From Camelus ferus (lineage: Eukaryota), in assembly GCF_009834535.1 (NCBI RefSeq), contig NC_045705.1, positions 56,234,001 through 56,298,000 of the forward strand: 64,000 nucleotides of DNA, given 5' to 3'. The notes below the pieces were generated by a model, which saw only the letters and a list, made by a program, of their open reading frames with translations, made no database searches and had not been told where the DNA came from. Positions 1,370 to 56,849 of this stretch are shown piece by piece. Made by a program: the position numbers and the translations under genes. Numbering within the stretch: position 1 is the first letter of the stretch; each line of letters begins with the position of its first letter.

Positions 1370-1540
1370 TTGATTAATGATATTTACATTCATTATAACA
1401 TTTAGCCCTAGAAATTATTGCAATTATTTAGCAAAAGTGAAATTGAGTCAAAAAGAGGTTAAATAACTTGCCCAAAGTCTCAGAGCTAATAAGGGATAAG
1501 CCACCATCCTAAGCTGGTCTCTGTAGCTATATCTTCAACA
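1370..1540 (-). mobile_element. MIR SINE
   Basis: MIR core: gaggttaaataacttgcccaaagtctcagagcta. Confidence 0.7.
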
Positions 1541-1763
1541 GCATAAACAACGTTCCGCAAACTCTACCCATGCACTAACATACTAAAAATCTATTCCTGA
1601 TCTAATTTTTTTTTTCCTTTTCAGCTAATTCAAGAGTTCCATGGCACCTCTGCTAGAATTTTCTACTTTACTATACCATTCTCTCACCCTGCTTTCAGTG
1701 ACTGAATACCAAATGTTGAGACATACCAAATTGTAAGCACACAATTTCACTTTTAAAAATAGG

Positions 1764-1769
1764 TTTATT
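1764..1769 (-). terminator. Probable MMP26 polyadenylation signal AATAAA
   Basis: TTTATT on plus strand, about 160 nt past the stop codon. Confidence 0.6.
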
Positions 1770-1929
1770 GTGATCTGGAAGTGTTCTGAATTTTGACTCA
1801 GCTGCCCTAAGTTCCATTCCTTTGGGGCTCATTCGATTGGTCTCAGAGGTGGATTTAGTGCTTTGAGTTCTTAGATCCTCCAGTGAAGCCACTGAAAGGC
1901 CAGATTGAATGATTTCTTCTGTGCCAGCA

Positions 1930-1958
1930 TTAGGGCTTTTTAGATGAACATCTTTCTC
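1930..1958 (-). CDS. MMP26: MMP26 coding exon 6 (C-terminus GERCSSKKP*)
   Basis: Acceptor TCTTCTGTCCCCATAAG|GA; TAA at 1932-1930; matches human GEKCSSDIP* in length. Confidence 0.88.
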
Positions 1959-4900
1959 CTTATGGGGACAGAAGAAAACAGTAAACTCCAAGTGGAATTT
2001 CCTGCCCAGATCCCCGCCCTTTCAGCAGGCACAGACCATAGAGTTGCTGGATTCTTTGGATATCGTCAACACCAAGGTGGAAGGTTCTAAGGTCCCGATA
2101 CATGTATCTGGGGTACATTATGGAGTTCCAATTCCTGGAGTGCTGCAGGCCCAGAGAGTGACCTAGCTCATGAATGGCAACCAGGAACAGATTAAATCCT
2201 GAAAAGGAACAGACAAAAGGATAAAAATTATATATGCATAGGAAAGGCAGAAAGTCTGTAAAAAAAAAAAAAGGAAGAAAAAAGAGAACAGAAAAGGAAG
2301 AAAGAGCAAATGTAAGAGTGCAGGAAAAAAGCAAAGAGAGGTGGACAGAATCTAGGTGAGAAACAAAATGGCAAATTAAAATGAACAAACTGGAAGTGAA
2401 CAGAAGTTGAGAGAATGATAAATGGAAACAAAGGGATAAGAGAGAGAACGCACAATATGATGATGTTTATCATAGAAGTATCTTTGTTCAGAAGTGATCC
2501 CACCTCCCCCCACTCATTAGAAGACCCAATTCCTCAGCTAAATCATCCCGCCTCACCCTGGCCACTCTGAATCCTGCCTTCTACCTTCTTCACAATATGC
2601 TAGGCCCAAATGGAGACCATCAATACCAACCCCCAAGCTCCCGGAGAGTTCTAGCACTCCCACCAGTTCAGGTCTTTACCTCTGTATGAAGTCGACCAGT
2701 GTTCTCCCTTGTCAAAGTGGATAGTTCCTGCAGCTCCAGAATTTGGTAAAAAGGCATGGCCTAAGACACCACCTGGCCCATCAAATGGACAACCATCTCC
2801 ATGGGCTGTGAACGACAGAAACTATTGCCACAATAGGGTTTCGCAGGCAAGGGCAGGAATGGTCTTAGGTAAGCCTCAGTGCCTCAGTGCCTCATGCACG
2901 CTGCAACTGCTACTGCTGGAGAGGTGAGAGGGCTGAGGCACCATCTATGTAGAAAAATAGGATGGGGCCAAAAATCTAGCTACTCCCTATCTTCTGTGGC
3001 AAAAAAAAAAAGAAAGGAAAGGTGGAAGAGACTGAGTGAAGGTTGTATGTTAAACACAAAGATCTCTTCCCAAAATGGAGGAAAAGAGGGGAAGGGAACT
3101 TAGGCACTGCAGGCTTTCATAAATAGGTTTGATCAACTCAGTAGCATTTCAACAGATTTGAGAGCCACACAACTCTCTTTTGACAGGAGAATGTGCAATA
3201 GGCTTTCCCTCGCTTTATTCACACAACAGTGCATCCTCCAGTCCCCTACCTACTACCTCATTGTTCCAAAAATATCTTTCCTGGTATAGGTTTATTGATT
3301 TCCATTAGGGTTTTGCCTTCCTTTTTTCTCAGCAGCTAGATTAGACGGACTAGGTTTTTGTTTCAGAACTGAGACCATTTGCCTTTTACATGGGACACCA
3401 TACCCTCCCTCCCATGTTATTTTCTAACCCAGCTCCCAGAAAGAAATCTTGATGTCTGCATCTTCACTCTCCACTTGCTGGAAGATCAAGGGGGTCACAT
3501 TGCTCCAGATGGAAACTGCATCATGTATAATGTTTTTCACTGTGGATTGCTTTAGATCATTTGGGTAATTGATAATCCTGAAAGAAGAAATCTTTAAGTA
3601 GAATAGCTCAAAGGTATAGGAATAATCCAGCTCTAAAAAGGCATGACTCTGCTTTGGAGAAAATCACTTAATACTTTGGGGCCTTATTTTACTATCCGAA
3701 AAGAGAATAAACCCCAGACAAACTGAATCAAAAGCCCAGGAAATTAAACCTGCAAAATACAGATGTTTAAGAATTTTTACAAATTCTCCACATTGTTCTT
3801 ATCTACACTAAGTCCTGAGAATGACAGCCCTATAGGGTAATTGTGAGGAAAAAAATCATGATGGACTCCATTGAAATGTATGGCATTTCATATAGTTTAG
3901 TATTGCTTTGTTTTGGCTATCCCCAATAGCCAAAATGCTTAGGATCCCCAGTAGAATAAGTAACATGGATGTGGAGCAAAAATACATCAAATTATATCCT
4001 AACACCCCCCTCCCCCTCCCTACCCCCACCACTTACACACAGGGGGATAAAAGTATGTTTAGTTAAGGGAAGAATGATAGGTTCACAGCCAAAGAATGGT
4101 AGTTAGGCTCCACTTCCAAAAGAGATGATCTGGGGAAGCTAGAATGAGAACTGAGAGAATTGCCTTTTCTGAGGAAGACTGGGGGCTTTGGAGAGACTGC
4201 CAGCGAAAGCAGAAGACAGTAGAGGTGCCTCCAGGAGGGACATTGCAGGCAGTCACCCCGCTCATCCCTCCAGGCCATAACCACAAGCACCTGTAGGTCA
4301 GAGTGTGCTTATTCCATTTAGAACTTGCTGCAGAGGCGGAGTCGTGATCAACATCAGTAACTCCACAGCGGGGCTGGTGTAGCACAGTCAGCGTTTGCTC
4401 CTCCCTCAGGTTTGCCTCGTTCAGATGGAACTGCGGCAGGAGCTGTATCTTTTCCCCCTGGGTAAGGAGTGATGGTTCTTTCTTGGTCAAGAAAAACTGA
4501 TGGAAATAGTCCTGGGTGGAAGATTGGGAATGAGGAGTACTTAGAGACAGCAAGGACAGACTCACAGCATCAGTAGCCCAGGCATAGCCTCCTTTGAAGG
4601 CCTGGGAAGGATGGTGCTTTGTCTCTCTGGTCTTCTTAAATGTCTTATTCTCAGCTGAATGATGGCAACGATGCCCGATTCTCCTGTCACTCAGTAGGTA
4701 ACATTAAACATGGGTGCTAAAATTAAAATGGCCTGGATAACCCATTAAAACTTCTCTGAAAATAAAGCATTAAATTTTCAGAACAGAGAGGCCCAAAGGC
4801 AAAAGTTGTCAGGGTAGGGAAAAACTACCCCCCTCCCCATCTTGAGTTCCTGTCGCTGGACTAATAATAAAATTAACACGAGACAGATTAACAGGCGAAA

Positions 4901-6541
4901 AAGAAATACATTCTAGTTCATGCACATGGGGTCTCATAGAAATGGGACTTAAGAAGTGGCCAAAGCAGGCAGCTTTTATACTTCTTAGACAAAGAAATGA
5001 TATATTTGGGAGGAATTGACAGGACAAAGAAACTTAGGTTTGGGTGCCCAACTGGTGAAGAATCTAAACAGAGTTTGGGCTTGGGGTAGTAAAGTTAAAA
5101 AGTAACAGCGTTTGTTTATCTAGGACTCTTGGCCTGGATTCCTCTTTGGTGGTAAGGGTGTCCTTCTACCTCCAGATGCAGGGAGCGCACCTTTTATACG
5201 AGAGATTTATTTCCTGCTTTCAGGGAGACAGAAAGGAAGATCAGGGTGTCCCTCTTGGGTCGGCCATTTCTTAAGCAACTTTAATTCAAAATAATCATTG
5301 TGCCATTGAGGCACATTTTGGGGCAGTCCATTCTGGGCTCCAGAAAGGTCATGAAGGTATAGATGGGAATTGCTCAGGGAAAATGACCTCTGATCTTTCT
5401 CATCGATTAAAGTTTTCTCAGTCAGGACAGAATCTATGACTCCTAGGATATAGAATTTAGCTGCTTCTGTATACTCAGTCCATTTGCATTTACATATCAA
5501 TTCCATTAAAATACTTCTAAAAATCTCATTCTTCACCTACTCCCTGTCCAACACTGACTTTCTTAACAATCCAGTGAACTAAACTTCAACCTCCAGGGCA
5601 GGGAGTGAAGGTGGGGAGGCACATTGTATTATAGTAACTCTTTCTACATCTTTATTTGAACTCTAGCTGGGCTGAAAGTACTTTAAGGGCATTGCTCATG
5701 TCTAATGAAATTTGGTCTATACTACAATTCTTATAAATCATACTTGATCTTTGATTGATATTTGAGATTGATTGATTTTTGAGTTTTGTATAAAATTGCA
5801 TTCTTATTATACCTTTAGTCTATTGTGACCTTGGCTGGGCACTCAGAGGCACATGATTTACCAAATTTTTCTAGGTTAGATATTAGCAGGAAATTTTACC
5901 AGGTCCCTGAATGATCATAAAGCAGATGACTGAAACCAGTTATAAAGAGTTTTAGGTGTTTTGAATGCAGTTTCTTGAGGAATTTGAAAGTGTTTGGTAG
6001 ACAGGTTTAAGAGATTTCTCAGTCAATAGGAAAAACACATCAGTCCATTTGAATCACTTCCCCAGATCCCTCACCACCTAGTAGGCTCAGAGATCCAGAC
6101 CTCTGAGTGTACACTTTGCCATATGGAATAATAGAAGAGTGAGACATGAACATTTGCACTGAATTATTCATTAGGTACCATAAGCAAAATTTATTAAACT
6201 CTTACCTGGAAGAGTAATTTGTATAAGCACCATTCTTTTACCAGCCCCCACAAATGATTTCATTTATTTTAAAATCAGAAGAAAAGAAATGAACTTAGAG
6301 ATTGAAGAGAATGATTTACTATGAAACAGTAAATATATTTGTCTTTATACCATGAAGCAATGTGTATACATATAACACACATCTGGGAGAAGAACCCACC
6401 ATAGTCATAATGTGATAATGCGGTCCTGATTAACCCACCTACCTTAGCAAAGTCCAGTCCTTTAAGGTCTGTAGCAGGGGGCACTGGGAAGGCAAGGCAC
6501 CATGGCAGGAAAATTGTAGCTTTGAAGATGTCAGGCTGCAT
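1930..6541 (-). CDS. MMP26: Matrix metalloproteinase-26 (matrilysin-2/endometase), six coding exons, 261 aa, intact
   Basis: Manually spliced exons 6541-6443, 4511-4291, 3577-3429, 2805-2680, 2198-2037 and 1958-1930 (99+221+149+126+162+29 = 786 nt). All introns are GT-AG and the frame is open. Features: signal/pro region [22 protein letters not shown], switch [18 protein letters not shown], structural-Zn [16 protein letters not shown], Met-turn IMYP, no hemopexin domain. Colinear with human MMP26 as I recall it. Confidence 0.95.
2037..2198 (-). CDS. MMP26: MMP26 coding exon 5 (catalytic Zn motif and Met-turn)
   Basis: Acceptor CCTTTTCAG|GA; [54 protein letters not shown]; donor G|GTCTGT. Confidence 0.95.
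2680..2805 (-). CDS. MMP26: MMP26 coding exon 4 (structural Zn/Ca sites; absent from ORF track)
   Basis: Acceptor TTCACAG|CC; [42 protein letters not shown]; donor G|GTAAAG. Confidence 0.93.
3429..3577 (-). CDS. MMP26: MMP26 coding exon 3 (absent from ORF track)
   Basis: Acceptor TTTCTTCTTTCAG|G; [49 protein letters not shown]; donor G|GTTAGA. Confidence 0.93.
4291..4511 (-). CDS. MMP26: MMP26 coding exon 2 (prodomain, cysteine switch)
   Basis: Acceptor CCACCCAG|GAC; [12 protein letters not shown]...HQPRCGVTD...KWNKHTLTY(R); donor CAG|GTGCTT. Confidence 0.93.
4807..5343 (-). mobile_element. ERV1-type solo LTR in MMP26 intron 1
   Basis: Begins tgtcaggg and ends with ttttggggcagtccattctg, the reverse complement of a typical ERV1 LTR start. 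Confidence 0.6.
6443..6541 (-). CDS. MMP26: MMP26 coding exon 1 (signal peptide and start of prodomain)
   Basis: ATG at 6541-6539; [33 protein letters not shown]; donor AAG|GTAGGT. Confidence 0.93.
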
Positions 6542-6598
6542 GGCAAAGCTCATTTCTCCCCAGCCTGAATTCATGTACCAAGCATGGATCAGCAGGAC

Positions 6599-6631
6599 TT
6601 TATAGCCGTGCCAGCAATGCCCAGTGACTCA
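6599..6631 (-). promoter_or_regulatory. MMP26 proximal promoter: TATA box and AP-1 site
   Basis: TATAAA on minus strand at 6604-6599, 58 nt upstream of the ATG; perfect TGACTCA at 6625-6631. This is the typical MMP promoter layout. Confidence 0.75.
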
Positions 6632-8022
6632 CACTGCCAGTTTCTCCTTTCTTTGCATTGGTTCTTGCCGTCACTGCCCATTCTGGGTTGAACGCAGAGC
6701 CAGCCTGCCAGAGTGATGCCAGCAGCCATGGGATTTATTTTCACCTCCATTTCACACCTGACAGCCCTCAGGACACATGGCCATAACCTTGGTTAAGGAA
6801 ATACTGGAATATCTCAGATTATAGGGGATATTATTCTTTAAAAATAGAGGGGGGAAAAAAAAGAAACAGGAGACATAGGAACAATTTATTAAAGCTTTAT
6901 CTGATATAATTTCTTTACTAGTCACCGACAAATATCTTGCTCCAGAAGCTAAAAAGAGAAGTTGAGGAAGGGAATAGCATCCCCTGTAGTGAAGACTCAG
7001 GTCATAATATGAAAAAAAATCCCACCTAGGAGAGAGAGGAACCCACAGAAAGAGAAAGTTGCTGTGTTTGAGAATGTTTGAGAAAATACATCATTGATAA
7101 TAAATTGAGAGAGACACAGAGATAAGCATACACACCCATAAGGTTTGAGCTGATAACCTTTGAAATCACAGGTACGGGTCTGAATATCAGCTCTGCTACT
7201 TAAAAGCTGATTTGCCTTAGGCAAGTTATTTAACATTATAAAGCCTGACTCTGACTTGTTCTTGAAATTCTGGTGCAGAATTGTTAATAAGTGAAATCCC
7301 CATATGTTTACAGACTCATAAACTATACCATAGACTCACTGAGGACAGAAACTTCTTTGATTTGCATTGACAGCTGTAGTACATTCTTTGGAACCTAAAA
7401 GGAACCTCTTATTTATTAGATGAATGAAAGTGTTCAGTGAAAGCATCTCATGGCCACTAACGAGACTGGATGTAAGTTCTTTGTGTCTATTTTGCTAGTG
7501 GTAAATATGAGCATGTAACTCAGATCTCTTGATGTACAGCAGAAGATAATCATAATAACTTATTAAGTACATATGCTGTGCCAATAATGCACTGTCTCGC
7601 TTCATGAACACAACCATTTGTGAAGTAGAAGTTTTATTTTCATATTATTGTTCAAGAAAGGAGGCTTCACGTCATTTAACTGTCATTTAGATAGTCACAA
7701 TGCTCAAAGTGATATGTAGACATTATAAACAAAAAGTATTCTACTCTGAAAGCAGCATTTTTAATCACTGGACTGGACTGCCAATTTCAAAGGGCTTGCT
7801 CCATCTCTCGTGATGCCACAAGCTGCCGTGATGCTGTTTCTGGCACTCCCAGTGTGCACCAGCAGTCTGGTTAGGCAGACTCAGGTGAGCAGTCACCTGT
7901 AAGACGGGCCCAGTGTTCAAGTAAATGAGTGCAGGATGCTGAGACCTAGGTAACCTACGAAAGTAAATAAGTGACTTATTAATGATTTAGCTACAGATAA
8001 GAAGTATGTATTTGAAGTATAG

Positions 8023-9689: not shown

Positions 9690-12641
9690 TTTGACCAATG
9701 TAAACAGAGGCATTTCTGTCTGCCCAGGGACCCAGCAAAAATCATGCTAGTTGACACCTCTGTTAACAAGCTTGATGACTCATAAGCAGCCTTTTGACTT
9801 GGCTTGACCACAGTCCTAGAGATAGTCCTATCTGTTCATAGACCTGGCAGAAGAAGGACTTTTCTTGCCAAAACCAGACTATAAAGACCAGAAAAGGTGA
9901 CAGCTCCTTAAAATGCACAGACACCAATGCAAAGCTACAAGAATCATGAAGAATAAAGCAAATATGACACCAACAAATAAAACTAATAAAGCACCAGTAA
10001 CTGACTCTATAGAAATGGAGCTCTGTGAACTGCTTGACAAAGAATTCAAAATAATAATTTTTTAAAAACTCAATAAACTGCAAGAAAACACAGACCACTA
10101 AACAAAATCAGAAAAATAATACAAGAACACAATGAGAAATTAAAGAAATAAAAACCATAAAAAAGAACCAAAGAGAAATCCTGTAGCTGAAGAATGCAAT
10201 TCATGAGCTGAAAATTCAATAGAAAACTTCAATAGCAGACTTGATTAAACAAAAGAATCAGTGAGCTCAAAAAGAAATCATTTGAAATTATGCAGTTAGA
10301 GAAACAAAAAGGAAAAAAAAAAAGAATTAAAAAGATTAGGAAAGCCTACAGGGTTTACACAGCACCATCAAGAGAACCAATACATACATTATAAAAGTCC
10401 TAGAAAAAGAAACAGAGAAAGGGGCAGAAAGCTTATTTAAAGATATAATGACTGAAACTTCTCAAATCTAGGAATGTTATTGACATCCAGATACGAGTAA
10501 AGGAACACAAATAGGTTGAATACAAAGAGGTCTACACTGAGTCACATTATAACTAAATTATCAAAATAGAAAGATAAAGAGAAGATTTTAAATCAGCAAG
10601 AAAAAAAAGTGAATTGGCACATCCAAGACAGCCCCCAGAAGACTATAAGCAGATTTCTCACCTGTCAAGGAGAGAGTAGGATGATATAATCTAAGTATTA
10701 AGAAAATAAAATGCCAACCAAGAATGCTTTACCCCATAAATCTGTCCTTTAAGAATGAAGGAGCGATAAAGACTTTACCAGACAAATAAAAACTAAGGGA
10801 ATTCGTCACCAATAGACCTGCCTTACAAGAAATGTTTTATGTTGTTCAGGTTGAAGAACTTTAAGTTGAAGAACAAGCTGTTCCAGTTAAAGTTCAAGTA
10901 GAAGAACTTCAAAGAGTTCTTCAAGTTAAAGGAAAAGACACTTAACAACATAAAAGTAAAAATCTCACTGATTTTGCCTAAGAAAATAAAAATGTCACTG
11001 TTAAATATACAAAGACAAATACAGAATATTATAAAACAGTAATGGTAGTGTATAAGTCACTTTTAACATTAATGTATAAACTTAAAAGTAGTAAAAAAAA
11101 AAAAAAGAAACAAAACTATAACCACTGAAATTTGTTAATGAAGAAAACAGTATAGAAAAAAGAAAATTTTGAAATCAGTTGCATAAAGTGTGCAGACATA
11201 AGGAGGTGTAGAATATTGAGATGAGGTTATAGTTAGTCATTAGCTTAAAATAGACTGCTGTAGATATAAAATGTTTGATGTAAACCCCATGGTGAACATG
11301 CACACATACACACACACACACAATGTATAGTAAATACACAAAAGATAAAAAACAAGAAAATGCTAAACACACAGAAAATATTTAACAAAATGGAAATAGT
11401 CATTCTTACCTTACTGTATAAATGAAGTTTGTAGTAATAAACACCTACTTAAAAATGAAGAGAACCTCAAATAAACAACCTAACTTTACAACTCAAGGAA
11501 CTAAATAAAGAACAAACTGAGCCCAAAGTAATCAGGAAAAAGAAATTAAAAAGATGAGAGCAAAAATAAATAAGGTGGAGAGTAGAGAAGTACTATAAAA
11601 ATTAAAACAATTTCTTTTGTGAAAAGATAAACAAAATTGATAAACCCTTAACTAGACTAAGTAAAAAGAGAGAAACCTAAAAGCAAGCAAATTAGAAGTG
11701 AAATAGATGTTACCACAGAAATAAAAAGATAATAAAAGAATGTTATGAAAAATTATATACCAACAAATTGAACAACCTCAAAATAATAAATTCCTTCATA
11801 GAATCTATGAAGACTGAGTAAAAAAGAAATAGAAAGTCATACAGACCTATAACAAATAAGATTGAAGGAGTAAAGAAAAATGCCAAACAAAGAAAAGCCC
11901 AGGACCAGATGGCTTTACAAGTGATTTCTGCTAAACATTTAAGAAAGATTTAAAGAATTTATATCAATTATTTTTAAATTCTTTGTAAAAGTGGAAGTTA
12001 TATCCTGAATTAATTCTATGAGGCCAGCATCACTGTAATACCAAAGCTAGACAAAGACACCACAAGAAGAGAAAGATACAGTACAATATCCCTGATGAAC
12101 NNNNNNNNNNNNNNNNNNNNNNNNNNNNNNNNNNNNNNNNNNNNNNNNNNNNNNNNNNNNNNNNNNNNNNNNNNNNNNNNNNNNNNNNNNNNNNNNNNNN
12201 NNNNNNNNNNNNNNNNNNNNNNNNNNNNNNNNNNNNNNNNNNTACCTCACAAAATGAAGGGTAAAAATCACATGATCATCTCAATAGATGTATAAAAAGC
12301 ATTTAGTAAAATTCAGTACTTTTAGTAAAACTCAAAAAACTCTCAAAAATTAGATATAGAAGAAACTTATCTTAACTCAACAAAGGCACTTTAAGAAAAG
12401 CCCACAGCTTACATCTTACTCAGTGGTGGAAAGCTGAAAGCATTCCCTTTAAGATCTAGAACAAATCAAGGATGCCTCCTCTCATTTCTTCTTTTCAACA
12501 TAGTATTGAAAGATCTAGTCAGAGCAATGAGGCAAGAAAAAGAAATAAAAGACGTCCAAATCAGAAAGGAAGTAAAACTATCTCCGTAGGTGATACGGTG
12601 ATCTTATATGTAGAACACCCTAGACTCCACATGTGCACACG

Positions 12642-17811: not shown

Positions 17812-20800
17812 ATATCCACCTTCAACACCTCTGAAATTGGTGTCTCTGCCTTCTTCCTCATTGGGATCCCAGGGATGGAGTCTGCCACCATTTGGGTCTC
17901 CATCCCCATTTGCCTTATGTACCTTGTTGCCATCCTGGGGAACTGCCCCATCCTCATTTTCATAAAAATGGAGCCTTCTCGGCATGAACCCATGAACTAT
18001 TTTCTCTCCATGTTGGCTCTCTCTGACTTGGGACTGTCCCTCTCCTCTCTCCCTACCATGCTTAGAATATTCTTATTCAGTGCTCCGGGAATTTCCTCTG
18101 ATGCCTGTATTGCCCAAGAGTTTTTCATTCATGGATTCCCAGCTATGGAATCATCAGTACTTCTCATCATGTTTTTTGATCACTTTATTACCATCTGCAA
18201 TCCTCTGAGATACACCTCCATCCTAACCAGTGCCAGAGTCATGAAAATAGGGCTTACTTTTTCTCTCAAAAATATTTTATTGATCCTTCCTTTTCCTTTA
18301 ACTTTAAGACATCCAAGATACTGTAAGAAGAACCTCCTTACAAGGTTAATGTCATCTATGGCTTATTTGTAGCTCTCACAGGCATCCTAGACTTCACATT
18401 TATTTTCATGTCCTACATGCTGATACTTACAGCCATGTTGAGCATAGGATCACAGAGGGAAAGACTCAAGGTCCTCAATATATGTGTTTCCCACATCTGT
18501 GCTGTGCTTATCGTCTATGTTCCCATTATCTCCTTAGCTGTCATCTACCTGTTTTCCAAACACAGTTCCCAAGTCATGAGGATCCTCATGGTTGATGTTT
18601 TCCTGCTGGTACCGCCATTGATGAACCCCACTGTATACTGTGTGAAGAGCCAGCAGATAAGAAATCTGGTTTTACCTCCCTACAAATAAAAGTCCAGGAC
18701 CAGATGGCTTCACCAGGGAATTCTACCAAACATACAAACAAGAACTCATACCAGTCCTTCTCAAACTCTTCCAGAAGATTGAAAAAGAGGGAATACTCCC
18801 AAACTCATTCTATGAAGCCACCATCACCCTGATACCAGAACCAGGCAAAGATANNNNNNNNNNNNNNNNNNNNNNNNNNNNNNNNNNNNNNNNNNNNNNN
18901 NNNNNNNNNNNNNNNNNNNNNNNNNNNNNNNNNNNNNNNNNNNNNNNNNNNNNNNNNNNNNNNNNNNNNNNNNNNNNNNNNNNNNNNNNNNNNNNNNNNN
19001 NNNNNNNNNNNNNNNNNNNNNNNNNNNNNNNNNNNNNNNNNNNNNNNNNNNNNNNNNNNNNNNNNNNNNNNNNNNNNNNNNNNNNNNNNNNNNNNNNNNN
19101 NNNNNNNNNNNNNNNNNNNNNNNNNNNNNNNNNNNNNNNNNNNNNNNNNNNNNNNNNNNNNNNNNNNNNNNNNNNNNNNNNNNNNNNNNNNNNNNNNNNN
19201 NNNNNNNNNNNNNNNNTGGTGAAAAACTCAAAAGCTTCCCACTAAAATCTGGGACAAGACAAGGATGCCCACTATTACCACTCCTATTCGACATAGTCTT
19301 GGAAGTCTTAGCCACAGCAATCAGGCAAAAGAGAGAAATAAAAGGGATCTGAATTGGAAAAAAAGTGTAAAAGTGTCGCTATATGCTGACAATATGTTAC
19401 CATACATAGAAAACCCTAAAAGGTCCACACAAAAACTACTAGAGCTGATCAAAGAATTCAGCAAGGTAGCAGGTTACAAGATTATCGTACAAAAATCAGT
19501 TGCATTTCTTTACACTAACGATGAATCAACAGAAAAAGAAAGTAAAGAAATAATCCCCTTTAAAATAGCACCCAAAGTAATAAAATATCTAGGAATAAAT
19601 CTAACCCAGGAGGTGAAAAAATTATACACNNNNNNNNNNNNNNNNNNNNNNNNNNNNNNNNNNNNNNNNNNNNNNNNNNNNNNNNNNNNNNNNNNNNNNN
19701 NNNNNNNNNNNNNNNNNNNNNNNNNNNNNNNNNNNNNNNNNNNNNNNNNNNNNNNNNNNNNNNNNNNNNNNNNNNNNNNNNNNNNNNNNNNTTTCACAGA
19801 ACTAGAACAAATCATAATAAAATTGATATGGAACCATCAAAGACCTAGAATTGCCAAAGCATTACTGAAGAGAAAGAAAGAGTCTGGAGGAATAACTCTC
19901 CCAGACTTCAGACAATACTATGGAGCTACAGTCATCAAGACAGCATGGTATTGGTACAAAAACATATAGACCAATGAAACAGAATAGAGAGCCCAGAAAT
20001 GAACCCACAAACTTTTGGTCAACTAATCTTCGACAAAGGAGGCAAGAATATACAATGGAATAAAGACAGCCTCTTCAGCAAATTGTGTTGGGAAAACTGG
20101 ACAGCAGCCTGTAAAACAATGAAGCTAGAACACTCCCTTACACCATACACAAAAATAAACTCAAAATGGATCAAAGACTTAAACATAAGACAAGATACAA
20201 TAAACCTCCTAGAAGAAAATATTGGCAAAACATTATCTGACATACATCTCAAAAATGTTCTCCTAGAACAGTCTACTCAAGCAATAGAAATAAAAGCAAG
20301 AATAAACAAATGGGACCTAATGAAACTTACAAGCTTCTGCACAGCAAAGGAAACCATAAGTAAAACAAAATGACAACCTATGGAGTGGGAGAAAGTTTTT
20401 GCTAATGAAACCGACAAAGGCTTGATCTCCAGAATATATAAGCAGCTCTTATGACTTAATAAGAAACAACCNNNNNNNNNNNNNNNNNNNNNNNNNNNNN
20501 NNNNNNNNNNNNNNNNNNNNNNNNNNNNNNNNNNNNNNNNNNNNNNNNNNNNNNNNNNNNNNNNNNNNNNNNNNNNNNNNNNNNNNNNNNNNNNNNNNNN
20601 NNNNNNNNNNNNNNNNNNNNNNNNNNNNNNNNNNNNNNNNNNNNNNNNNNNNNNNNNNNNNNNNNNNNNNNNNNNNNNNNNNNNNNNNNNNNNNNNNNNN
20701 NNNNNNNNNNNNNNNNNNNNNNNNNNNNNNNNNNNNNNNNNNNNNNNNNNNNNNNNNNNNNNNNNNNNNNNNNNNNNNTTACCATGCAACCCAGGAATCC

Positions 20801-21465
20801 CACTCCTGGGCATATATCCAGAAGGAACACTACTTCAGGANNNNNNNNNNNNNNNNNNNNNNNNNNNNNNNNNNNNNNNNNNNNNNNNNNNNNNNNNNNN
20901 NNNNNNNNNNNNNNNNNNNNNNNNNNNNNNNNNNNNNNNNNNNNNNNNNNNNNNNNNNNNNNNNNNNNNNNNNNNNNNNNNNNNNNNNNNNNNNNCATTT
21001 GCAGCAACATGGATGCTCCTGGAGAATGTCATTCTAAGTGAAGTAAGCCAGAAAGAGAAAGAAAAATACCATATGAGATCACTCATATGTGGAATCTAAA
21101 ACAAACAAAAAACACACAAACAAAGCATAAATGCAAAACAGAAATAAACTCATAGACATAGAATACAAACTTGTGGTTGGCAAGGGGGCGGAGGGTGGGA
21201 AGGGATAGACTAGGATTACAAAACTGTAGAATAGATAAACAAGATTATACTGTATAGCACAGGGAAATATTCATAAGATCTTATGGTAGCTTTCGGAGAA
21301 GAAAATGTGACAATGAATATATATATGTTCATGTATAACTGAAAAATTGTGCTCTACACTTGAATTTGATACAACATTGTAAAATGATTATAAATCAGTA
21401 AAAAATGTTAAAAAAAAAAAAAAAGAAATCGGGTTTTAGAGAAGCTGTGTCAAAAATACAGCTGA
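17812..21465 (+). pseudogene. OR51A-family olfactory receptor pseudogene, split by an L1
   Basis: ATA replaces the start ATG at 17812 (ISTFNTSEIGVSAFFLIGIPG...). A ~52-nt frameshifting deletion follows 18339 (CKKNLL jumps to NKVNVIYG). DRF is changed to DHF. The CDS runs to QIRNLVL at 18674 and resumes after the L1 as EKLCQKYS* (21439-21465). Reconstructed length is 313 aa. Confidence 0.92.
18675..21422 (+). mobile_element. 5'-truncated L1 (ORF2 RT remnant, 3'UTR, polyA) with 16-bp TSD
   Basis: ORF2 motifs [15 protein letters not shown] and KTAWYWYKN; polyA ends at 21422; TSD AAGAAATC(T/G)GGTTTTA at 18659-18674 and 21423-21438; stop codons and a frameshift in ORF2. Confidence 0.95.
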
Positions 21466-35725: not shown

Positions 35726-36667
35726 ATGTCTCCTCTTAACCACACGAACACTGAAGTTCTTAGATTCCTCCTTATCGGTATCCCTGGACTGGAGAAGGAT
35801 CACATCTGGATATCTATTCCTTTCTCATCTGTATACCTTCTTTCCCTCCTGGGTGACCTTGCCATCCTCTTCTTTATCAAGACGGAACCAAGTCTCCATG
35901 AACCCATGTACTATTTCCTTTCCATGCTCTCCATCTCTGACCTAAGGTTGTCCATCTCTTTCTTACCCACCACTCTGGGACTATTCCTGTTTGGTGTCCA
36001 TGAAATTCATGCAGCTTCATGCTTTGCCCAGGAGTTCTTTATCCACCTATTCACAGTTACTGAAGCCTCTGTGCTATCTGTAATGGCATTTGGCCAATAT
36101 GTGGCCATCCACAACCCTCTGAGATACAGCACAATCTTAACCAGCTCCCGAGTCATCAAAACAATGGTCTTACTGACTTCCAGAAACATTATCTTGATTC
36201 TTCCACTACCCTTTCTGCTGCAACGGCTGACATACTGTCATCAAAACCTGCTCTCACACTCCTACTGTCTCCACCAGGATGTCATGAAGCTGGCCTGCTC
36301 TGACAACAGAGTTAACTTTGTCTATGGACTCTTTGCTGCCCTTTCTACTATTCTGGATTTGTTGTTTATTACTTTCTCCTACATAATGATCTTAAAGACA
36401 GTACTGGGCATTGCAACCCCCAAAGAGCAGCTTAAGGCCCTCAACACCTGCATCTCTCATATCTGTGCTGTGCTCATCTTCTATGTGCCCATGCTAAGTG
36501 CAGCCATGCTCCACCATTTTGCCAGGGGTGTGTCTCCTATGATCCATATTCTCATGGCTGATGTGTTCCTACTGGTGCCACCCCTGATGAATCCCATCGT
36601 GTACTGTGTGAAGACCCATCAAATCCAAGAAAAGATTATGGGGAAACTTTGTCCAAAAAGAAGTTGA
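35726..36667 (+). CDS. OR51A-family class I olfactory receptor, 313 aa; open frame but key motifs degenerate
   Basis: Has LHEPMYYFL, HSYCLHQDVMKLAC, KALNTCISHICA and PPLMNPIVY. However GN is GD, DLGLS is DLRLS and MAFDRY is MAFGQY. Confidence 0.88.
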   Translation: MSPLNHTNTEVLRFLLIGIPGLEKDHIWISIPFSSVYLLSLLGDLAILFFIKTEPSLHEPMYYFLSMLSISDLRLSISFLPTTLGLFLFGVHEIHAASCFAQEFFIHLFTVTEASVLSVMAFGQYVAIHNPLRYSTILTSSRVIKTMVLLTSRNIILILPLPFLLQRLTYCHQNLLSHSYCLHQDVMKLACSDNRVNFVYGLFAALSTILDLLFITFSYIMILKTVLGIATPKEQLKALNTCISHICAVLIFYVPMLSAAMLHHFARGVSPMIHILMADVFLLVPPLMNPIVYCVKTHQIQEKIMGKLCPKRS

Positions 36668-39114: not shown

Positions 39115-40180
39115 TTTCAGAGTGACTTCAGCATTGTGGCAAAATAAGATGCCTCTCATTTATCATCTTTCCAACAATGACAACAAAAAAGTATCCATCC
39201 ATGAACAAAAGTGCCTCTGTGGGAGTTGTGGGATCCAGTACCATATTTCAAGGAACCTGGGAGGGGTCACACCCACACATTCACTGGGTAATAGGCAAAC
39301 AGACCTTGATTCTGGCTATTGTCTCCACAACAGCCTATGAACCAGCTCAATACCCTGTCAGTCTTGGTCTTTCTGCACTTGGAAAACACTGACTGGGGCA
39401 GTCACCCACGAATGAAAGAAGCTTTGTGGAATTCCAGATTCCCAGAAAAGTTCCAGCATACCTTTGGAATAAAAATACAATTTTAGATGTACTGGAGTGT
39501 GTAAGAGGAAAAGCTAGATTTTGTCTTCATTACTCCTCCCCCAGGTAGCAAAGTTAAGGGCTAAGTGAGACCTTCTAGGAGGATGGGGGATGGAGGGAGA
39601 GAGAGTGGCTGAGTGAACTCCCATATTCCCCAGGTGTGCAGGACCCTGCAAAAGAGACTTATTTCTCTTGTAGCATCCAGAGTACTAAATCCTACACTCC
39701 ACGACTGAAGAGAGGAAAGATATCAGGAGAGGTGCAGATAAAATTCTCAGAGGTCATTAAAGGGATGTGGTCCCTGCTGATGATTTGATGAACTCCATCA
39801 AGAAGTCTTTCCATGGGCCAATGGGAAAGCATGATCTGAAGATCCCCCTAACTGGGAAAAAAAAGCAAANNNNNNNNNNNNNNNNNNNNNNNNNNNNNNN
39901 NNNNNNNNNNNNNNNNNNNNNNNNNNNNNNNNNNNNNNNNNNNNNNNNNNNNNNNNNNNNNNNNNNNNNNNNNNNNNNNNNNNNNNNNNNNNNNNNNNNN
40001 NNNNNNNNNNNNNNNNNNNNNNNNNNNNNNNNNNNNNNNNNNNNNNNNNNNNNNNNNNNNNNNNNNNNNNAGCAGAGGAACTGAATAAACATTTTTCCAA
40101 GAAGATATGCAAATGACCAACAGGTACATGAAAAGATGCTCAACATCAGTAATCATCAGGGAAATGCAAATCCAAACTGG
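39115..40180 (+). mobile_element. L1 remnant: 5'UTR-like segment joined to late ORF2 segment
   Basis: gacttcagcattgtggcaaaataagatg (L1M 5' end); after the N-run, ctgaataaacatttttccaagaagatatgcaaatgaccaacagg. Confidence 0.65.
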
Positions 40181-45340: not shown

Positions 45341-46306
45341 ATGACAATCCTTTATAATAACAGCCTCCAAAAAACCACTTTCTTCCTGACAGGCTTCCAA
45401 GGTCTGGAAGAGCTCCACGGCTGGATATCTATTCTCTTCTGCTCCATCTATTTGATAGTTATTGTAGGAAACCTTACCATCCTCCACATCATCCGGACTG
45501 ATGTCACACTCCACGAATCCATGTACTATTTCTTGGCCATGCTGGCCCTTACGGACCTGGGCCTTTGCCTTTCTACACTGCCCACTGTGATGGGCATCTT
45601 CTGGTTTGATGCCAGAGAAATTGGTATCCATGCCTGTTTCATTCAGCTCTTCTTCATCCATACCTTGTCCCTAGTGGAGTCTTCAGTTCTACTGTCCATG
45701 TCCATTGACCGCTATGTTGCCATCTGCAACCCACTGCGTTACTCCACAGTCTTGACACCTGCACGGATTGTCAGGATGGGGCTGAGCTTGGTGTGTAGAA
45801 GCGCACTGCTCATCTTCCCCCTGCCATTCCTCCTTAAGCGCTTCCAGTACTGTCGCTCCCATGTGCTGGCCCATGCTTATTGTCTGCACCTAGAGATCAT
45901 GAAGCTGGCCTGCTCTAGCATCATTGTCAATCACATCTATGGGCTCTTCGTTGTGGCCTGCACCATAGGTGTGGATTCACTGCTCATCTTCCTCTCCTAT
46001 GCCCTGATCCTCCGCACCGTGCTCAGCATTGCCTCCCGCCAGGAGCGACTCCGGGCCCTCAACACCTGCGTCTCCCATATCTGTGCTGTGCTGCTCTTCT
46101 ATATCCCCATGATTGGCTTGTCCCTTGTGCACCGCTTTGGTGAACATCTACCCCGCATTGTACACCTCCTCATGTCTTATGTGTATCTATTGGTCCCACC
46201 TCTCATGAATCCCATTGTCTACAGCATCAAGACCAAGCAAATCCGCCAACGCATTGCTAAGAAGTTTGAGTTTATAAAATTGCCTAGGTGTTTTCGACAG
46301 GATTAG
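45341..46306 (+). CDS. OR51G1: Olfactory receptor 51G1, 321 aa, intact
   Basis: MTILYNNSLQKTTFFLTGFQGLE, MSIDRY, HAYCLHLEIMKLACSSIIVNHIYG, RALNTCVSHICA, PPLMNP; matches recalled human OR51G1. Confidence 0.95.
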   Translation: MTILYNNSLQKTTFFLTGFQGLEELHGWISILFCSIYLIVIVGNLTILHIIRTDVTLHESMYYFLAMLALTDLGLCLSTLPTVMGIFWFDAREIGIHACFIQLFFIHTLSLVESSVLLSMSIDRYVAICNPLRYSTVLTPARIVRMGLSLVCRSALLIFPLPFLLKRFQYCRSHVLAHAYCLHLEIMKLACSSIIVNHIYGLFVVACTIGVDSLLIFLSYALILRTVLSIASRQERLRALNTCVSHICAVLLFYIPMIGLSLVHRFGEHLPRIVHLLMSYVYLLVPPLMNPIVYSIKTKQIRQRIAKKFEFIKLPRCFRQD

Positions 46307-55907: not shown

Positions 55908-56849
55908 ATGACGCTGAGGTCCCTGGAGAACAGCAGCAGCACGTCCTCCACCTTCCTGCTGAGCGGCGTGCCTGGGCTGGAGCACGTGCACCTCTGGGTC
56001 TCCATCCCACTGTGCTTCATATACCTCGTTTCCATCCTGGGCAACTGCACCATTCTGTGTATCATTAAAACAGAGCCCTTGCTCCATGAGCCTATGTACC
56101 TCTTCCTGTCCATGCTGGCTCTGACCGACCTGGGTCTGTCCCTTTGCACCCTCCCTACAGTGCTAGGCATCTTTTGGGTTGGGGCGCGTAATATTGGTCA
56201 TGATGCCTGTTTTACCCAGCTCCTTTTCATTCATTGCTTATCCTTCCTGGAGTCCTCCGTGCTACTGTCCATGGCCTTCGACCGCTTTGTGGCCATTTGT
56301 CGCCCCTTGCACTATGCGTCCATTCTCACCAACACCGTCATTGGCAGGATGGGCCTGGCCTCCCTGGGCCGCAGTGTAGTGCTCATTTTCCCATTACCTT
56401 TTATGCTCAAAAGATTCCCGTATTGTGGCTCCCCAGTCCTCTCACATCCTTATTGTCTCCACCAGGAAGTGATGAAGTTGGCCTGTGCAGACATCAGAGC
56501 CAACAGCGTCTATGGCTTGTTTGTCATTGTTTCCACAGTGGGTGTAGACTCACTCCTCATTCTCCTCTCCTATGCCCTGGTCCTGCACACCGTGCTGTCC
56601 ATCGCATCCAGGGCCGAGAGACTCAAGGCTCGTAACACCTGTGTCTCCCACATCTGCGCTGTGCTGCTCTTCTACACTCCCATGATTGGCCTGTCTGTCA
56701 TCCACCACTTTGGGAAGCAGGCGCCTCATCTGGTCCAGGTGATCATGGGCTTTGTGTACCTTCTCTTCCCTCCACTGACGAACCCCATCGTCTACAGTGT
56801 GAAGACCAAACAGATCCGAGATCGTGTGACCCAAGCCTTTTGTTACTAG
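55908..56849 (+). CDS. OR51G2: Olfactory receptor 51G2, 313 aa, open frame
   Basis: MTLRSLENSSST...MAFDRFVAIC...QIRDRVTQAFCY*; matches recalled human OR51G2. Confidence 0.95.
   Translation: MTLRSLENSSSTSSTFLLSGVPGLEHVHLWVSIPLCFIYLVSILGNCTILCIIKTEPLLHEPMYLFLSMLALTDLGLSLCTLPTVLGIFWVGARNIGHDACFTQLLFIHCLSFLESSVLLSMAFDRFVAICRPLHYASILTNTVIGRMGLASLGRSVVLIFPLPFMLKRFPYCGSPVLSHPYCLHQEVMKLACADIRANSVYGLFVIVSTVGVDSLLILLSYALVLHTVLSIASRAERLKARNTCVSHICAVLLFYTPMIGLSVIHHFGKQAPHLVQVIMGFVYLLFPPLTNPIVYSVKTKQIRDRVTQAFCY

What the first reader, a model, noticed from the sequence alone, without database searches (positions are those of the whole stretch)
1930..6541. Complete, intact MMP26 in a non-primate (camelid) genome
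Six exons splice with canonical GT-AG into a 261-codon open frame. All catalytic (H208/E209/H212/H218, M226) and structural zinc (H158/D160/H173/H186) residues are present, with a TATA/AP-1 promoter and a polyA signal. MMP26 is absent from mouse and often described as primate-restricted, so a functional artiodactyl copy would imply an older origin with repeated losses. The ORF track misses exons 3, 4 and 6 entirely.
Basis: partly seen in the sequence, partly recalled or inferred. Interest (0 to 1): 0.7.

Follow-up and report, generated by a model that had tools for sequence, protein, structure and literature searches.

The report
Camel MMP26 gene, already annotated
The window really holds a complete six-exon gene for the small secreted protease MMP26, but public databases already annotate the identical camel protein and orthologs across most mammalian orders, so it is an ordinary known gene.

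Summary
On the minus strand, six exons with GT-AG borders give a 261-codon frame. The cysteine switch, both zinc sites and the Met-turn are intact, and a TATA box, an AP-1-like site and an AATAAA signal are present.

The product is identical to RefSeq XP_010988966.3, "matrix metalloproteinase-26 [Camelus dromedarius]". Alpaca and wild Bactrian camel models also exist.

MMP26 proteins are annotated in carnivores, horse and rhino, bats, pangolin, armadillo and sloth, elephant, dugong, tenrec, rabbit, lemurs, tarsier and a marsupial. Their tree follows the species tree. Horse endometrium is published as expressing MMP26 at very high level. The "primate-restricted" view is a 2007 statement that is now out of date.

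The gene looks constrained:
- Camel-alpaca coding divergence is 0.76%, against 3.1% in the introns.
- Catalytic-domain omega is 0.51 (p = 4e-5).
- No frameshift is seen, where 11-17 indels would be expected under neutrality.
- Camelids depart at none of the 61 columns that are invariant in other placentals.

Two tests were inconclusive. The camelid-branch omega alone cannot be told from 1. The public RNA runs gave no proof of splicing, because introns are covered as well as exons.

Verdict: real, probably functional, already known. One lead remains: no ruminant, pig or whale MMP26 appeared among the protein hits.

The parts
6625..6631 (-). AP-1-like heptamer TGAGTCA, about 90 nt upstream of the ATG
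   Evidence: Located. Conserved in camel, alpaca, fox, rhino and pangolin; the bat differs (alignment). Binding was not tested.
6599..6604 (-). TATA box (GCTATAAAG), 58-63 nt upstream of the ATG
   Evidence: invariant in all six species aligned.
6572..6574 (-). Upstream in-frame ATG (MNSGWGEMSFA-), used by older 272-aa RefSeq models
   Evidence: It lies about 30 nt after the TATA box, that is about where transcription should begin, so the ATG at 6541 is the more likely start (inference). The current RefSeq versions use 6541.
6443..6541 (-). Exon 1 coding part: start codon, signal peptide and start of the propeptide (codons 1-33)
   Evidence: donor AAG|gtaggt.
4291..4511 (-). Exon 2: propeptide with cysteine switch PRCGVTD (residues 80-86) and start of the mature enzyme
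   Evidence: 96% identical to alpaca MMP26 and 58% to orang-utan MMP26.
3429..3577 (-). Exon 3: first part of the catalytic domain
   Evidence: Pfam Peptidase_M10 covers residues 98-253.
2680..2805 (-). Exon 4: structural zinc and calcium ligands (H158, D160, H173, H186)
   Evidence: These residues align with the matching residues of prostromelysin-1 (1slm).
2037..2198 (-). Exon 5: catalytic zinc motif [11 protein letters not shown] (208-218) and Met-turn (M226)
1959..2036 (-). Intron 5 (78 nt). It stays in frame if read through, giving an alternative C-terminus [24 protein letters not shown]
   Evidence: ORF 1960-2388. The read-through form is annotated as isoform X1 in Camelus ferus. Contigs of the RNA-labelled runs cross it unspliced.
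1930..1958 (-). Exon 6 coding part: last nine codons (ERCSSKKP) and the TAA stop at 1932-1930
   Evidence: The human protein ends EKCSSDIP at the same length.
1764..1769 (-). Polyadenylation signal AATAAA, 161 nt after the stop
   Evidence: The 3' end itself was not mapped: the contigs run on to an A-rich genomic stretch at about 1606.

Best explanation
This is the Camelus ortholog of MMP26 (matrilysin-2, endometase). It is an ordinary, vertically inherited, probably functional gene lying in the class-I olfactory receptor (OR51) cluster.

It encodes a 261-residue minimal matrix metalloproteinase: a signal peptide, a propeptide with a cysteine switch, and a zinc catalytic domain, with no hemopexin domain.

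By analogy with other matrixins, the protein is secreted as a zymogen in which Cys82 caps the catalytic zinc held by H208, H212 and H218. Removal of the propeptide frees the zinc, and E209 then acts as the general base for peptide-bond hydrolysis of matrix and other extracellular proteins.

Shown here: the gene structure, the intact motifs, identity to the annotated protein, orthology and sequence constraint. Inferred: secretion, activation, proteolytic activity and the tissue of expression (most likely endometrial epithelium and glands, as in human and horse).
For: - Gene model and motifs.
- Identity to RefSeq XP_010988966.3 over 261/261 residues, and three differences from alpaca XP_006203639.3.
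- Pfam Peptidase_M10 over the full model (1-159 of 159, E = 6.5e-58), with no hemopexin.
- Alignment to solved proMMP-3 and proMMP-7.
- Orthologs named MMP26 at 60-75% identity in Carnivora, Perissodactyla, Chiroptera, Pholidota, Xenarthra, Afrotheria, Lagomorpha and Primates, and at 46% identity in Sarcophilus.
- The placental MMP26 clade has 99/99 support (100/99 with Sarcophilus) and is species-tree-like, with the camelids inside Laurasiatheria.
- The neighbouring OR at 35726-36667 is 100% identical to 'olfactory receptor 51A7-like [Camelus bactrianus]'. OR51A-type genes share the MMP26 contig in rhino, tenrec, tarsier (a 252-kb contig), lorises and Sarcophilus.
- Camel versus alpaca: 6 differences in 786 coding nt (3 non-synonymous, all before residue 94) against 118 in 3812 intron nt; Poisson p = 1e-5.
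- Codon models on six Laurasiatherians: omega 0.66 overall (p = 7e-4 against 1) and 0.51 in the catalytic domain (p = 3.6e-5).
- Exon lengths are identical in camel, alpaca, fox, rhino and pangolin, although 11-17 indel events would be expected in 757 neutral nt.
- Camelids depart at none of the 61 columns invariant in 21 other placentals.
- The promoter TATA box is invariant in six species.
- Horse: MMP26 is the 12th most abundant endometrial transcript in pregnancy (PMC6855469), and the protein is found in equine uterine vesicles (PMC7835857).
Against: - No spliced camelid transcript was shown. In four RNA-labelled runs the contigs over 1606-2257 are colinear with the genome, with intron 5 and part of intron 4 included and no joints.
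- These runs hold intron 1 about as well as the whole gene (shares 0.20-0.41 against 0.22-0.33). They may therefore carry DNA or unspliced RNA.
- Contigs that resemble human DNA are filtered out, so spliced mRNA contigs could have been removed.
- Omega on the camelid clade (0.67 overall, 0.61 in the catalytic domain) does not differ from the background, but on its own it cannot be distinguished from 1 (p = 0.24 and 0.27).
- The family as a whole is only weakly constrained; propeptide omega is 0.94.
Confidence: 0.9

Rival explanations
1. It is an unprocessed pseudogene that has not yet decayed. The gene lost its function (for example its expression) recently in camelids, and the frame is still open by chance.
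For: No spliced transcript could be demonstrated. Camelid-branch omega is not separable from 1. MMP26 has been lost in other mammals such as the mouse (PMC2865498).
Against: - Camelus and Vicugna both keep the full frame.
- Their coding divergence is a quarter of the intron divergence (p = 1e-5), with no amino-acid change after residue 93.
- No conserved column is altered.
- The TATA box and all splice sites are intact.
- In simulation, substitutions alone at 0.10-0.15 per site leave the frame open in only 2.5-7% of trials. Several frameshifting indels would be expected on top of that.
- Only a very recent silencing, independent in each lineage, would fit.
Confidence: 0.07
2. It is a camelid-specific duplicate or another MMP (such as MMP7 or MMP12) misnamed MMP26, not the true ortholog.
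For: Names in databases are automatic. MMP7 has the same minimal architecture and similar exon structure.
Against: - The nearest non-MMP26 proteins are only 42-47% identical, against 60-75% for MMP26 of other orders.
- The tree puts the camelids inside a 99/99-supported placental MMP26 clade, in the expected Laurasiatherian position.
- The locus lies among OR51 genes, as MMP26 does elsewhere, not in an MMP cluster.
- Exon sizes match those of five other species exactly.
Confidence: 0.02

Closest known systems
Human MMP26 (matrilysin-2 / endometase; NP_068573, UniProt MMP26_HUMAN)
   Same: Both are 261 residues and align without gaps, with 177 of 261 residues identical. The protein alignment runs to the same last residue. 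The zinc motif, Met-turn and structural zinc ligands are the same, neither has a hemopexin domain, and both lie in the class-I olfactory receptor region.
   Different: - The cysteine switch is PRCGVTD in camel and PHCGVPD in human. The camel keeps the ancestral Arg81 found in Sarcophilus, Xenarthra, Afrotheria, lemurs, rabbit, horse and rhino, while Thr85 replaces Pro as in other Laurasiatheria.
- Camelids alone have Ala66, which removes the N64-x-T sequon present in 20 of 21 other placentals.
- The propeptide is the most divergent part.
Alpaca and Camelus ferus/bactrianus MMP26 (XP_006203639.3; XP_032346357.1, XP_006183172.2)
   Same: The same gene. The Camelus models are identical over the 261 residues, and alpaca differs at T50I, T73M and S93Y only. 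Exon and intron sizes are almost identical.
   Different: Older or alternative models add 11 residues from the upstream ATG (272 aa) or read through intron 5 (288 aa).
Horse MMP26
   Same: It is a Laurasiatherian ortholog. The donkey protein is 73% identical. Abundant endometrial expression and uterine-fluid protein are published for the horse. Like camelids, the horse has a diffuse epitheliochorial placenta (general knowledge).
   Different: The annotated equid and rhino proteins end in the intron-5 read-through tail (..LYG-M/VCLLEGR..) rather than the spliced ERCSS tail. No expression data were obtained for camel.
MMP7 (matrilysin)
   Same: It has the same minimal architecture (signal peptide, propeptide and catalytic domain only) and six exons (the exon count is from general knowledge). 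The solved zymogen 2mze aligns over residues 30-260.
   Different: Only about 42-47% identical (bird and frog MMP7). It forms a separate clade and lies in the main MMP cluster rather than among OR genes (general knowledge).

Membership tests
Matrixin (MEROPS M10A / Pfam Peptidase_M10) | Catalytic domain matching Peptidase_M10 above the curated threshold | tested here: met
   195.5 bits against a cut-off of 24; residues 98-253 cover profile positions 1-159 of 159.
Matrixin (MEROPS M10A / Pfam Peptidase_M10) | Zinc motif HExxHxxGxxH followed by a Met-turn | tested here: met
   [11 protein letters not shown] at 208-218 and M226 in SIMYP. The motif is conserved in all 24 orthologs aligned.
Matrixin (MEROPS M10A / Pfam Peptidase_M10) | Structural zinc ligands (His, Asp, His, His) | tested here: met
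   H158, D160, H173 and H186. They align to the equivalent residues of prostromelysin-1 (1slm).
Matrixin (MEROPS M10A / Pfam Peptidase_M10) | Propeptide cysteine switch PRCGxPD | tested here: met
   PRCGVTD at 80-86. Cys82 and Arg81 are present. Thr replaces the usual Pro at position 85, as in rhino, the fur seal Callorhinus and bat. Whether the switch keeps the enzyme latent was not tested.
Matrixin (MEROPS M10A / Pfam Peptidase_M10) | N-terminal signal peptide (secreted enzyme) | not tested
   The sequence shows a hydrophobic N-terminus ([17 protein letters not shown]) conserved with the human protein. No signal-peptide predictor was run.
MMP26 orthologous group | Groups with MMP26 of other mammals rather than with other MMPs | tested here: met
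   the placental MMP26 clade has 99/99 support and the camelids sit inside the Laurasiatherian part; 60-75% identity to MMP26 proteins against 47% or less for other MMPs.
MMP26 orthologous group | Minimal architecture of about 260 residues without a hemopexin domain | tested here: met
   261 residues. No PF00045 hit.
MMP26 orthologous group | Location in the class-I olfactory receptor (OR51) cluster, not the MMP cluster | tested here: met
   Three intact 7tm_4 ORFs lie at 35.7, 45.3 and 55.9 kb. The nearest is an OR51A4/A7-type receptor. OR51A-type genes and MMP26 share contigs in several species. A primate fused model joins MMP26 to OR51L1. The human map position is from PMC1867822 (11p15) and general knowledge.
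MMP26 orthologous group | Transcribed, spliced and translated into an active protease | tested here: inconclusive
   RNA-labelled runs hold the locus, but colinearly and with introns as well covered as exons, and the filter removes human-like contigs. Enzyme activity cannot be tested with these tools.

The most novel reading that the evidence does not exclude
Within Artiodactyla, MMP26 may survive only in camelids. The search that found MMP26 in about a dozen other orders returned no ruminant, pig, hippo or whale MMP26 protein, although those genomes are well annotated. If so, the gene was lost at the base of pigs, ruminants and whales, in addition to the rodent loss, and camelids would be the only artiodactyls in which its uterine role could be studied. 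This rests on absence from a protein list. No cattle, pig or whale DNA could be searched here.
Probability: 0.5. Interest if true: 0.25.

Novelty: already known. Interest (0 to 1): 0.1.

Why it matters
It matters little as a discovery. The gene, its exact protein and its wide mammalian distribution are already in RefSeq and UniProt, and non-primate expression is published for the horse.

The check is still useful in three ways:
- It shows that the 'primate-specific MMP26' statement still found in reviews is obsolete.
- It flags that camelids may be the only artiodactyls keeping the gene. That could interest people working on uterine and placental remodelling in species with epitheliochorial placentas.

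Tried and rejected
I did not resend them. It gave only colinear contigs and no joints.

2. I used the second run search on intron 1 alone, to tell RNA from DNA. Intron 1 is held as well as the whole gene, so these runs cannot prove splicing. The contig depth of 74.9 in run X1 is a whole-contig mean and may be inflated by its low-complexity ends, so I did not read it as expression.

I did not work around this. Instead I fitted two-ratio codon models that sum over ancestral states. They gave no power to separate the camelid omega from 1.

4. DNA of the armadillo, golden mole and elephant orthologs could not be fetched because the files were too large. The 272-aa Camelus ferus model was not on record. 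The codon analysis therefore has six Laurasiatherians only.

5. The supplement of the cetacean MMP paper, which might list MMP26 presence by species, is not held.

6. Rejected: that the primate 'OR51L1-like' proteins clustered with MMP26 are orthologs of the ORs in this window. They are only about 50% identical.

7. My first model of exon 6 was one base too long. This was corrected.
Full report
**What is in the sequence**

I read window 1500-7000 and placed the exon borders by motif search and translation. The gene is on the minus strand. Its coding exons are:

| Exon | Window coordinates | Length (nt) |
|---|---|---|
| 1 | 6541-6443 | 99 |
| 2 | 4511-4291 | 221 |
| 3 | 3577-3429 | 149 |
| 4 | 2805-2680 | 126 |
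| 5 | 2198-2037 | 162 |
| 6 | 1958-1930 | 29 |

- All five introns (1931, 713, 623, 481 and 78 nt) start with GT and end with AG after a pyrimidine tract.
- The joined frame is 786 nt: 261 codons plus TAA.
- The zinc motif is [11 protein letters not shown] and the cysteine switch is PRCGVTD at 80-86.
- TATAAA is at 6604-6599 and TGAGTCA at 6631-6625. AATAAA is at 1769-1764, 161 nt after the stop.

**What it is**

An open reading frame that contains exon 2 was searched against the protein collection, restricted to the exon-2 residues. It hit 'matrix metalloproteinase-26 [Vicugna pacos]' at 96% identity and a primate MMP26 at 58%. The cluster members include XP_010988966.3, 'matrix metalloproteinase-26 [Camelus dromedarius]', 261 aa.

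- My spliced translation is identical to that protein at all 261 positions.
- It differs from alpaca XP_006203639.3 at three positions: T50I, T73M and S93Y.
- It differs from the human protein at 84 positions, without any gap.
- Older or alternative models start at an upstream ATG (6574, 272 aa) or read through intron 5 (Camelus ferus isoform X1, 288 aa).

Pfam gives Peptidase_M10 over the whole profile and no hemopexin domain. The nearest solved structures are the zymogens of MMP-3, MMP-10 and MMP-7, and the zinc ligands align.

**How widely the gene is known**

A search with the camel protein returned proteins that their sources name MMP26, at 60-75% identity, from:

- Carnivora: Vulpes, Canis, Callorhinus, Zalophus, Neovison
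- Perissodactyla: Ceratotherium, Equus
- Chiroptera: Miniopterus, Pteropus, Phyllostomus, Glossophaga
- Pholidota: Manis
- Xenarthra: Dasypus, Choloepus
- Afrotheria: Loxodonta, Elephas, Dugong, Chrysochloris, Tenrec
- Lagomorpha: Oryctolagus, Ochotona
- Strepsirrhine and haplorhine primates and the tarsier
- A marsupial, Sarcophilus, at 46%

The next best proteins, matrilysins and collagenase-like proteins of birds, frogs and fish, are 47% identical or less.

A maximum-likelihood tree of 25 MMP26 proteins and 13 other MMPs gives a placental MMP26 clade with 99/99 support, and 100/99 with Sarcophilus. Its internal order follows the species tree: Xenarthra with Afrotheria, then Euarchontoglires, then Laurasiatheria. 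The two camelids lie together inside Laurasiatheria. The gene was therefore present in the placental ancestor, and probably the therian ancestor, and the camel copy is its ordinary vertical descendant.

**Surroundings**

- Three intact olfactory receptor ORFs lie at 35726-36667, 45341-46306 and 55908-56849 on the plus strand.
- The nearest is 100% identical to 'olfactory receptor 51A7-like [Camelus bactrianus]', and its orthologs are named OR51A4 or OR51A7.
- OR51A-type genes and MMP26 lie on the same contig in rhino, tenrec, Nycticebus, Otolemur, Sarcophilus and, within 252 kb, in Carlito (contig lengths).
- A fused primate model joins MMP26 to OR51L1.

This is the expected neighbourhood. Human MMP26 maps to 11p15 (PMC1867822).

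**Literature**

- PMC1867822 (2007) wrote that MMP26 probably evolved in primates, because it was then known only from human, chimpanzee and rhesus.
- The 2010 degradome comparison lists it as present in human and absent in mouse and birds (PMC2865498).

- In the mare, MMP26 ranks 12th among endometrial transcripts and 68th in chorioallantois in mid to late gestation (PMC6855469).
- The protein is detected in equine uterine extracellular vesicles (PMC7835857).

A working non-primate, Laurasiatherian MMP26 is thus already published.

**Is the camel copy under constraint?**

I recovered the exact coding exons of alpaca, arctic fox, white rhino, a bat (Miniopterus) and a pangolin from their genomic loci. 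Exon lengths 99/221/149/126/162 are identical in camel, alpaca, fox, rhino and pangolin. The bat has one in-frame 9-nt deletion.

Camel against alpaca:
- There are 6 differences in 786 coding nt, 3 synonymous and 3 non-synonymous. All non-synonymous changes fall before residue 94.
- The introns show 118 differences in 3812 aligned nt, that is 3.1%.
- At the intron rate, 24 coding differences would be expected. The probability of 6 or fewer is 1e-5, and the probability of 3 or fewer non-synonymous ones is 1.4e-5.

Camel against the four outgroups:
- Introns differ by 25-30% and carry 45-67 indel events in about 3 kb. That predicts 11-17 events in 757 neutral nt.
- The exons differ by 12-19% and have no frameshift.
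- In simulation, substitutions alone at 0.10-0.15 per site leave the frame open in 7% and 2.5% of trials.

Codon models on the fixed six-taxon tree:

| Partition | Omega | Test against omega = 1 |
|---|---|---|
| Whole alignment (250 codons) | 0.66 | LRT 11.4, p = 7e-4 |
| Catalytic domain | 0.51 | p = 3.6e-5 |
| Signal peptide plus propeptide | 0.94 | p = 0.73 |

- The camelid clade has the same omega as the rest: 0.67 against 0.66 overall, and 0.61 against 0.50 in the catalytic domain.
- With so few changes, the camelid clade cannot be separated from 1 on its own (p = 0.24 and 0.27).

In an alignment of 24 orthologs, 61 columns are invariant in the 21 other placentals, and camelids depart at none of them. 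The only highly conserved column where camelids are unique is T66A.

The TATA box is invariant and the AP-1-like site is kept in five of six species.

Taken together, the gene behaves like its orthologs: a weakly but clearly constrained catalytic domain and a nearly free propeptide. The exon-versus-intron and indel tests speak for function.

**Transcription**

- Fourteen RNA-labelled public runs, several from 'reproductive system' samples, hold 6-33% of the sampled words of 1700-6800.
I sent no part of those places again.
- On 1500-2733 the four runs gave seven contigs, all colinear with the genome. One of 665 nt spans 1606-2257, that is the 3' UTR, exon 6, the unspliced intron 5, exon 5 and 59 nt of intron 4. 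One 151-nt piece lies wholly within intron 4. There are no joints.
- A second search with intron 1 alone found the same runs holding 20-41% of its words, as much as for the whole gene.

These libraries therefore contain genomic DNA or unspliced RNA of the locus and give no evidence of splicing. Contigs resembling human DNA are removed without notice, so a fully spliced mRNA contig containing the conserved exons 3-4 could have been dropped. Absence of joints is not evidence of absence either. This test is inconclusive.

**Mechanism**

- Shown: the sequence has everything a matrixin zymogen needs.
- Inferred from the family: secretion through the N-terminal signal; latency through Cys82 bound to the catalytic zinc held by H208, H212 and H218; activation by loss of the propeptide; and hydrolysis with E209 as general base.
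- The switch reads PRCGVTD. Arg81 is the ancestral state, found in Sarcophilus, Xenarthra, Afrotheria, lemurs, rabbit, horse, rhino and bat.
- Human, tarsier, carnivores and pangolin have His81. Thr85 is shared with rhino, the fur seal Callorhinus and the bat.
- The likely site of action is the uterine epithelium and glands, by analogy with human and horse. This was not tested.

**Verdict**

The one lead left is negative evidence. No ruminant, pig, hippo or whale MMP26 appears, so camelids may be the only artiodactyls that keep the gene. I could not test this at the DNA level.

Noticed in passing
one search hit list (no window coordinates): MMP26-named proteins were found in about a dozen mammalian orders, but none from ruminants, pigs, hippos or whales, nor from rodents, cats, shrews or hedgehogs. 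Among artiodactyls only camelids appear. This may mean a loss at the base of the other artiodactyls.
   Followed up: partly
window 6344-6346 region of exon 2 product: residue 66 (codons 64-66, within 4511-4291): Camel and alpaca have Ala66 where 20 of 21 other placentals have Thr. This removes the N64-x-T glycosylation sequon of the propeptide. It is the only highly conserved column where camelids are unique.
   Followed up: partly
window 1959-2036: The 78-nt intron 5 is open in frame. Its read-through form is annotated as an isoform in Camelus ferus, and as the only or main model in rhino, donkey, dugong, elephant and golden mole. MMP26 may therefore have two alternative C-terminal tails across mammals. 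Contigs in RNA-labelled runs cross the intron unspliced.
   Followed up: partly
window 35726-36667, 45341-46306, 55908-56849 (+): Three intact class-I olfactory receptor genes (Pfam 7tm_4, E = 1e-105 to 1e-137). The first is identical to 'olfactory receptor 51A7-like [Camelus bactrianus]'.
   Followed up: partly
window 19265-19969 (+): A 234-aa ORF interrupted by an N run. It looks like a fragment of a LINE-1 reverse transcriptase; no family search was run. There are six N runs in the window: 12101-12242, 18854-19216, 19630-19791, 20472-20778, 20841-20995 and 39870-40070.
   Followed up: no
window 2695-2697 region: residue 162 in exon 4: Camelids have Cys162 (GDGCPFDG) where other mammals have Trp, Leu, Phe or Tyr. 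Carnivores and Saimiri instead have a Cys one position earlier. This is an extra unpaired cysteine next to the structural metal sites, of unknown effect.
   Followed up: no
window 6572-6574: An upstream in-frame ATG (ATGAATTCAGGC) is conserved in five of six species and lies about 30 nt after the TATA box. Older RefSeq versions started there (272 aa) and the current ones do not.
   Followed up: partly
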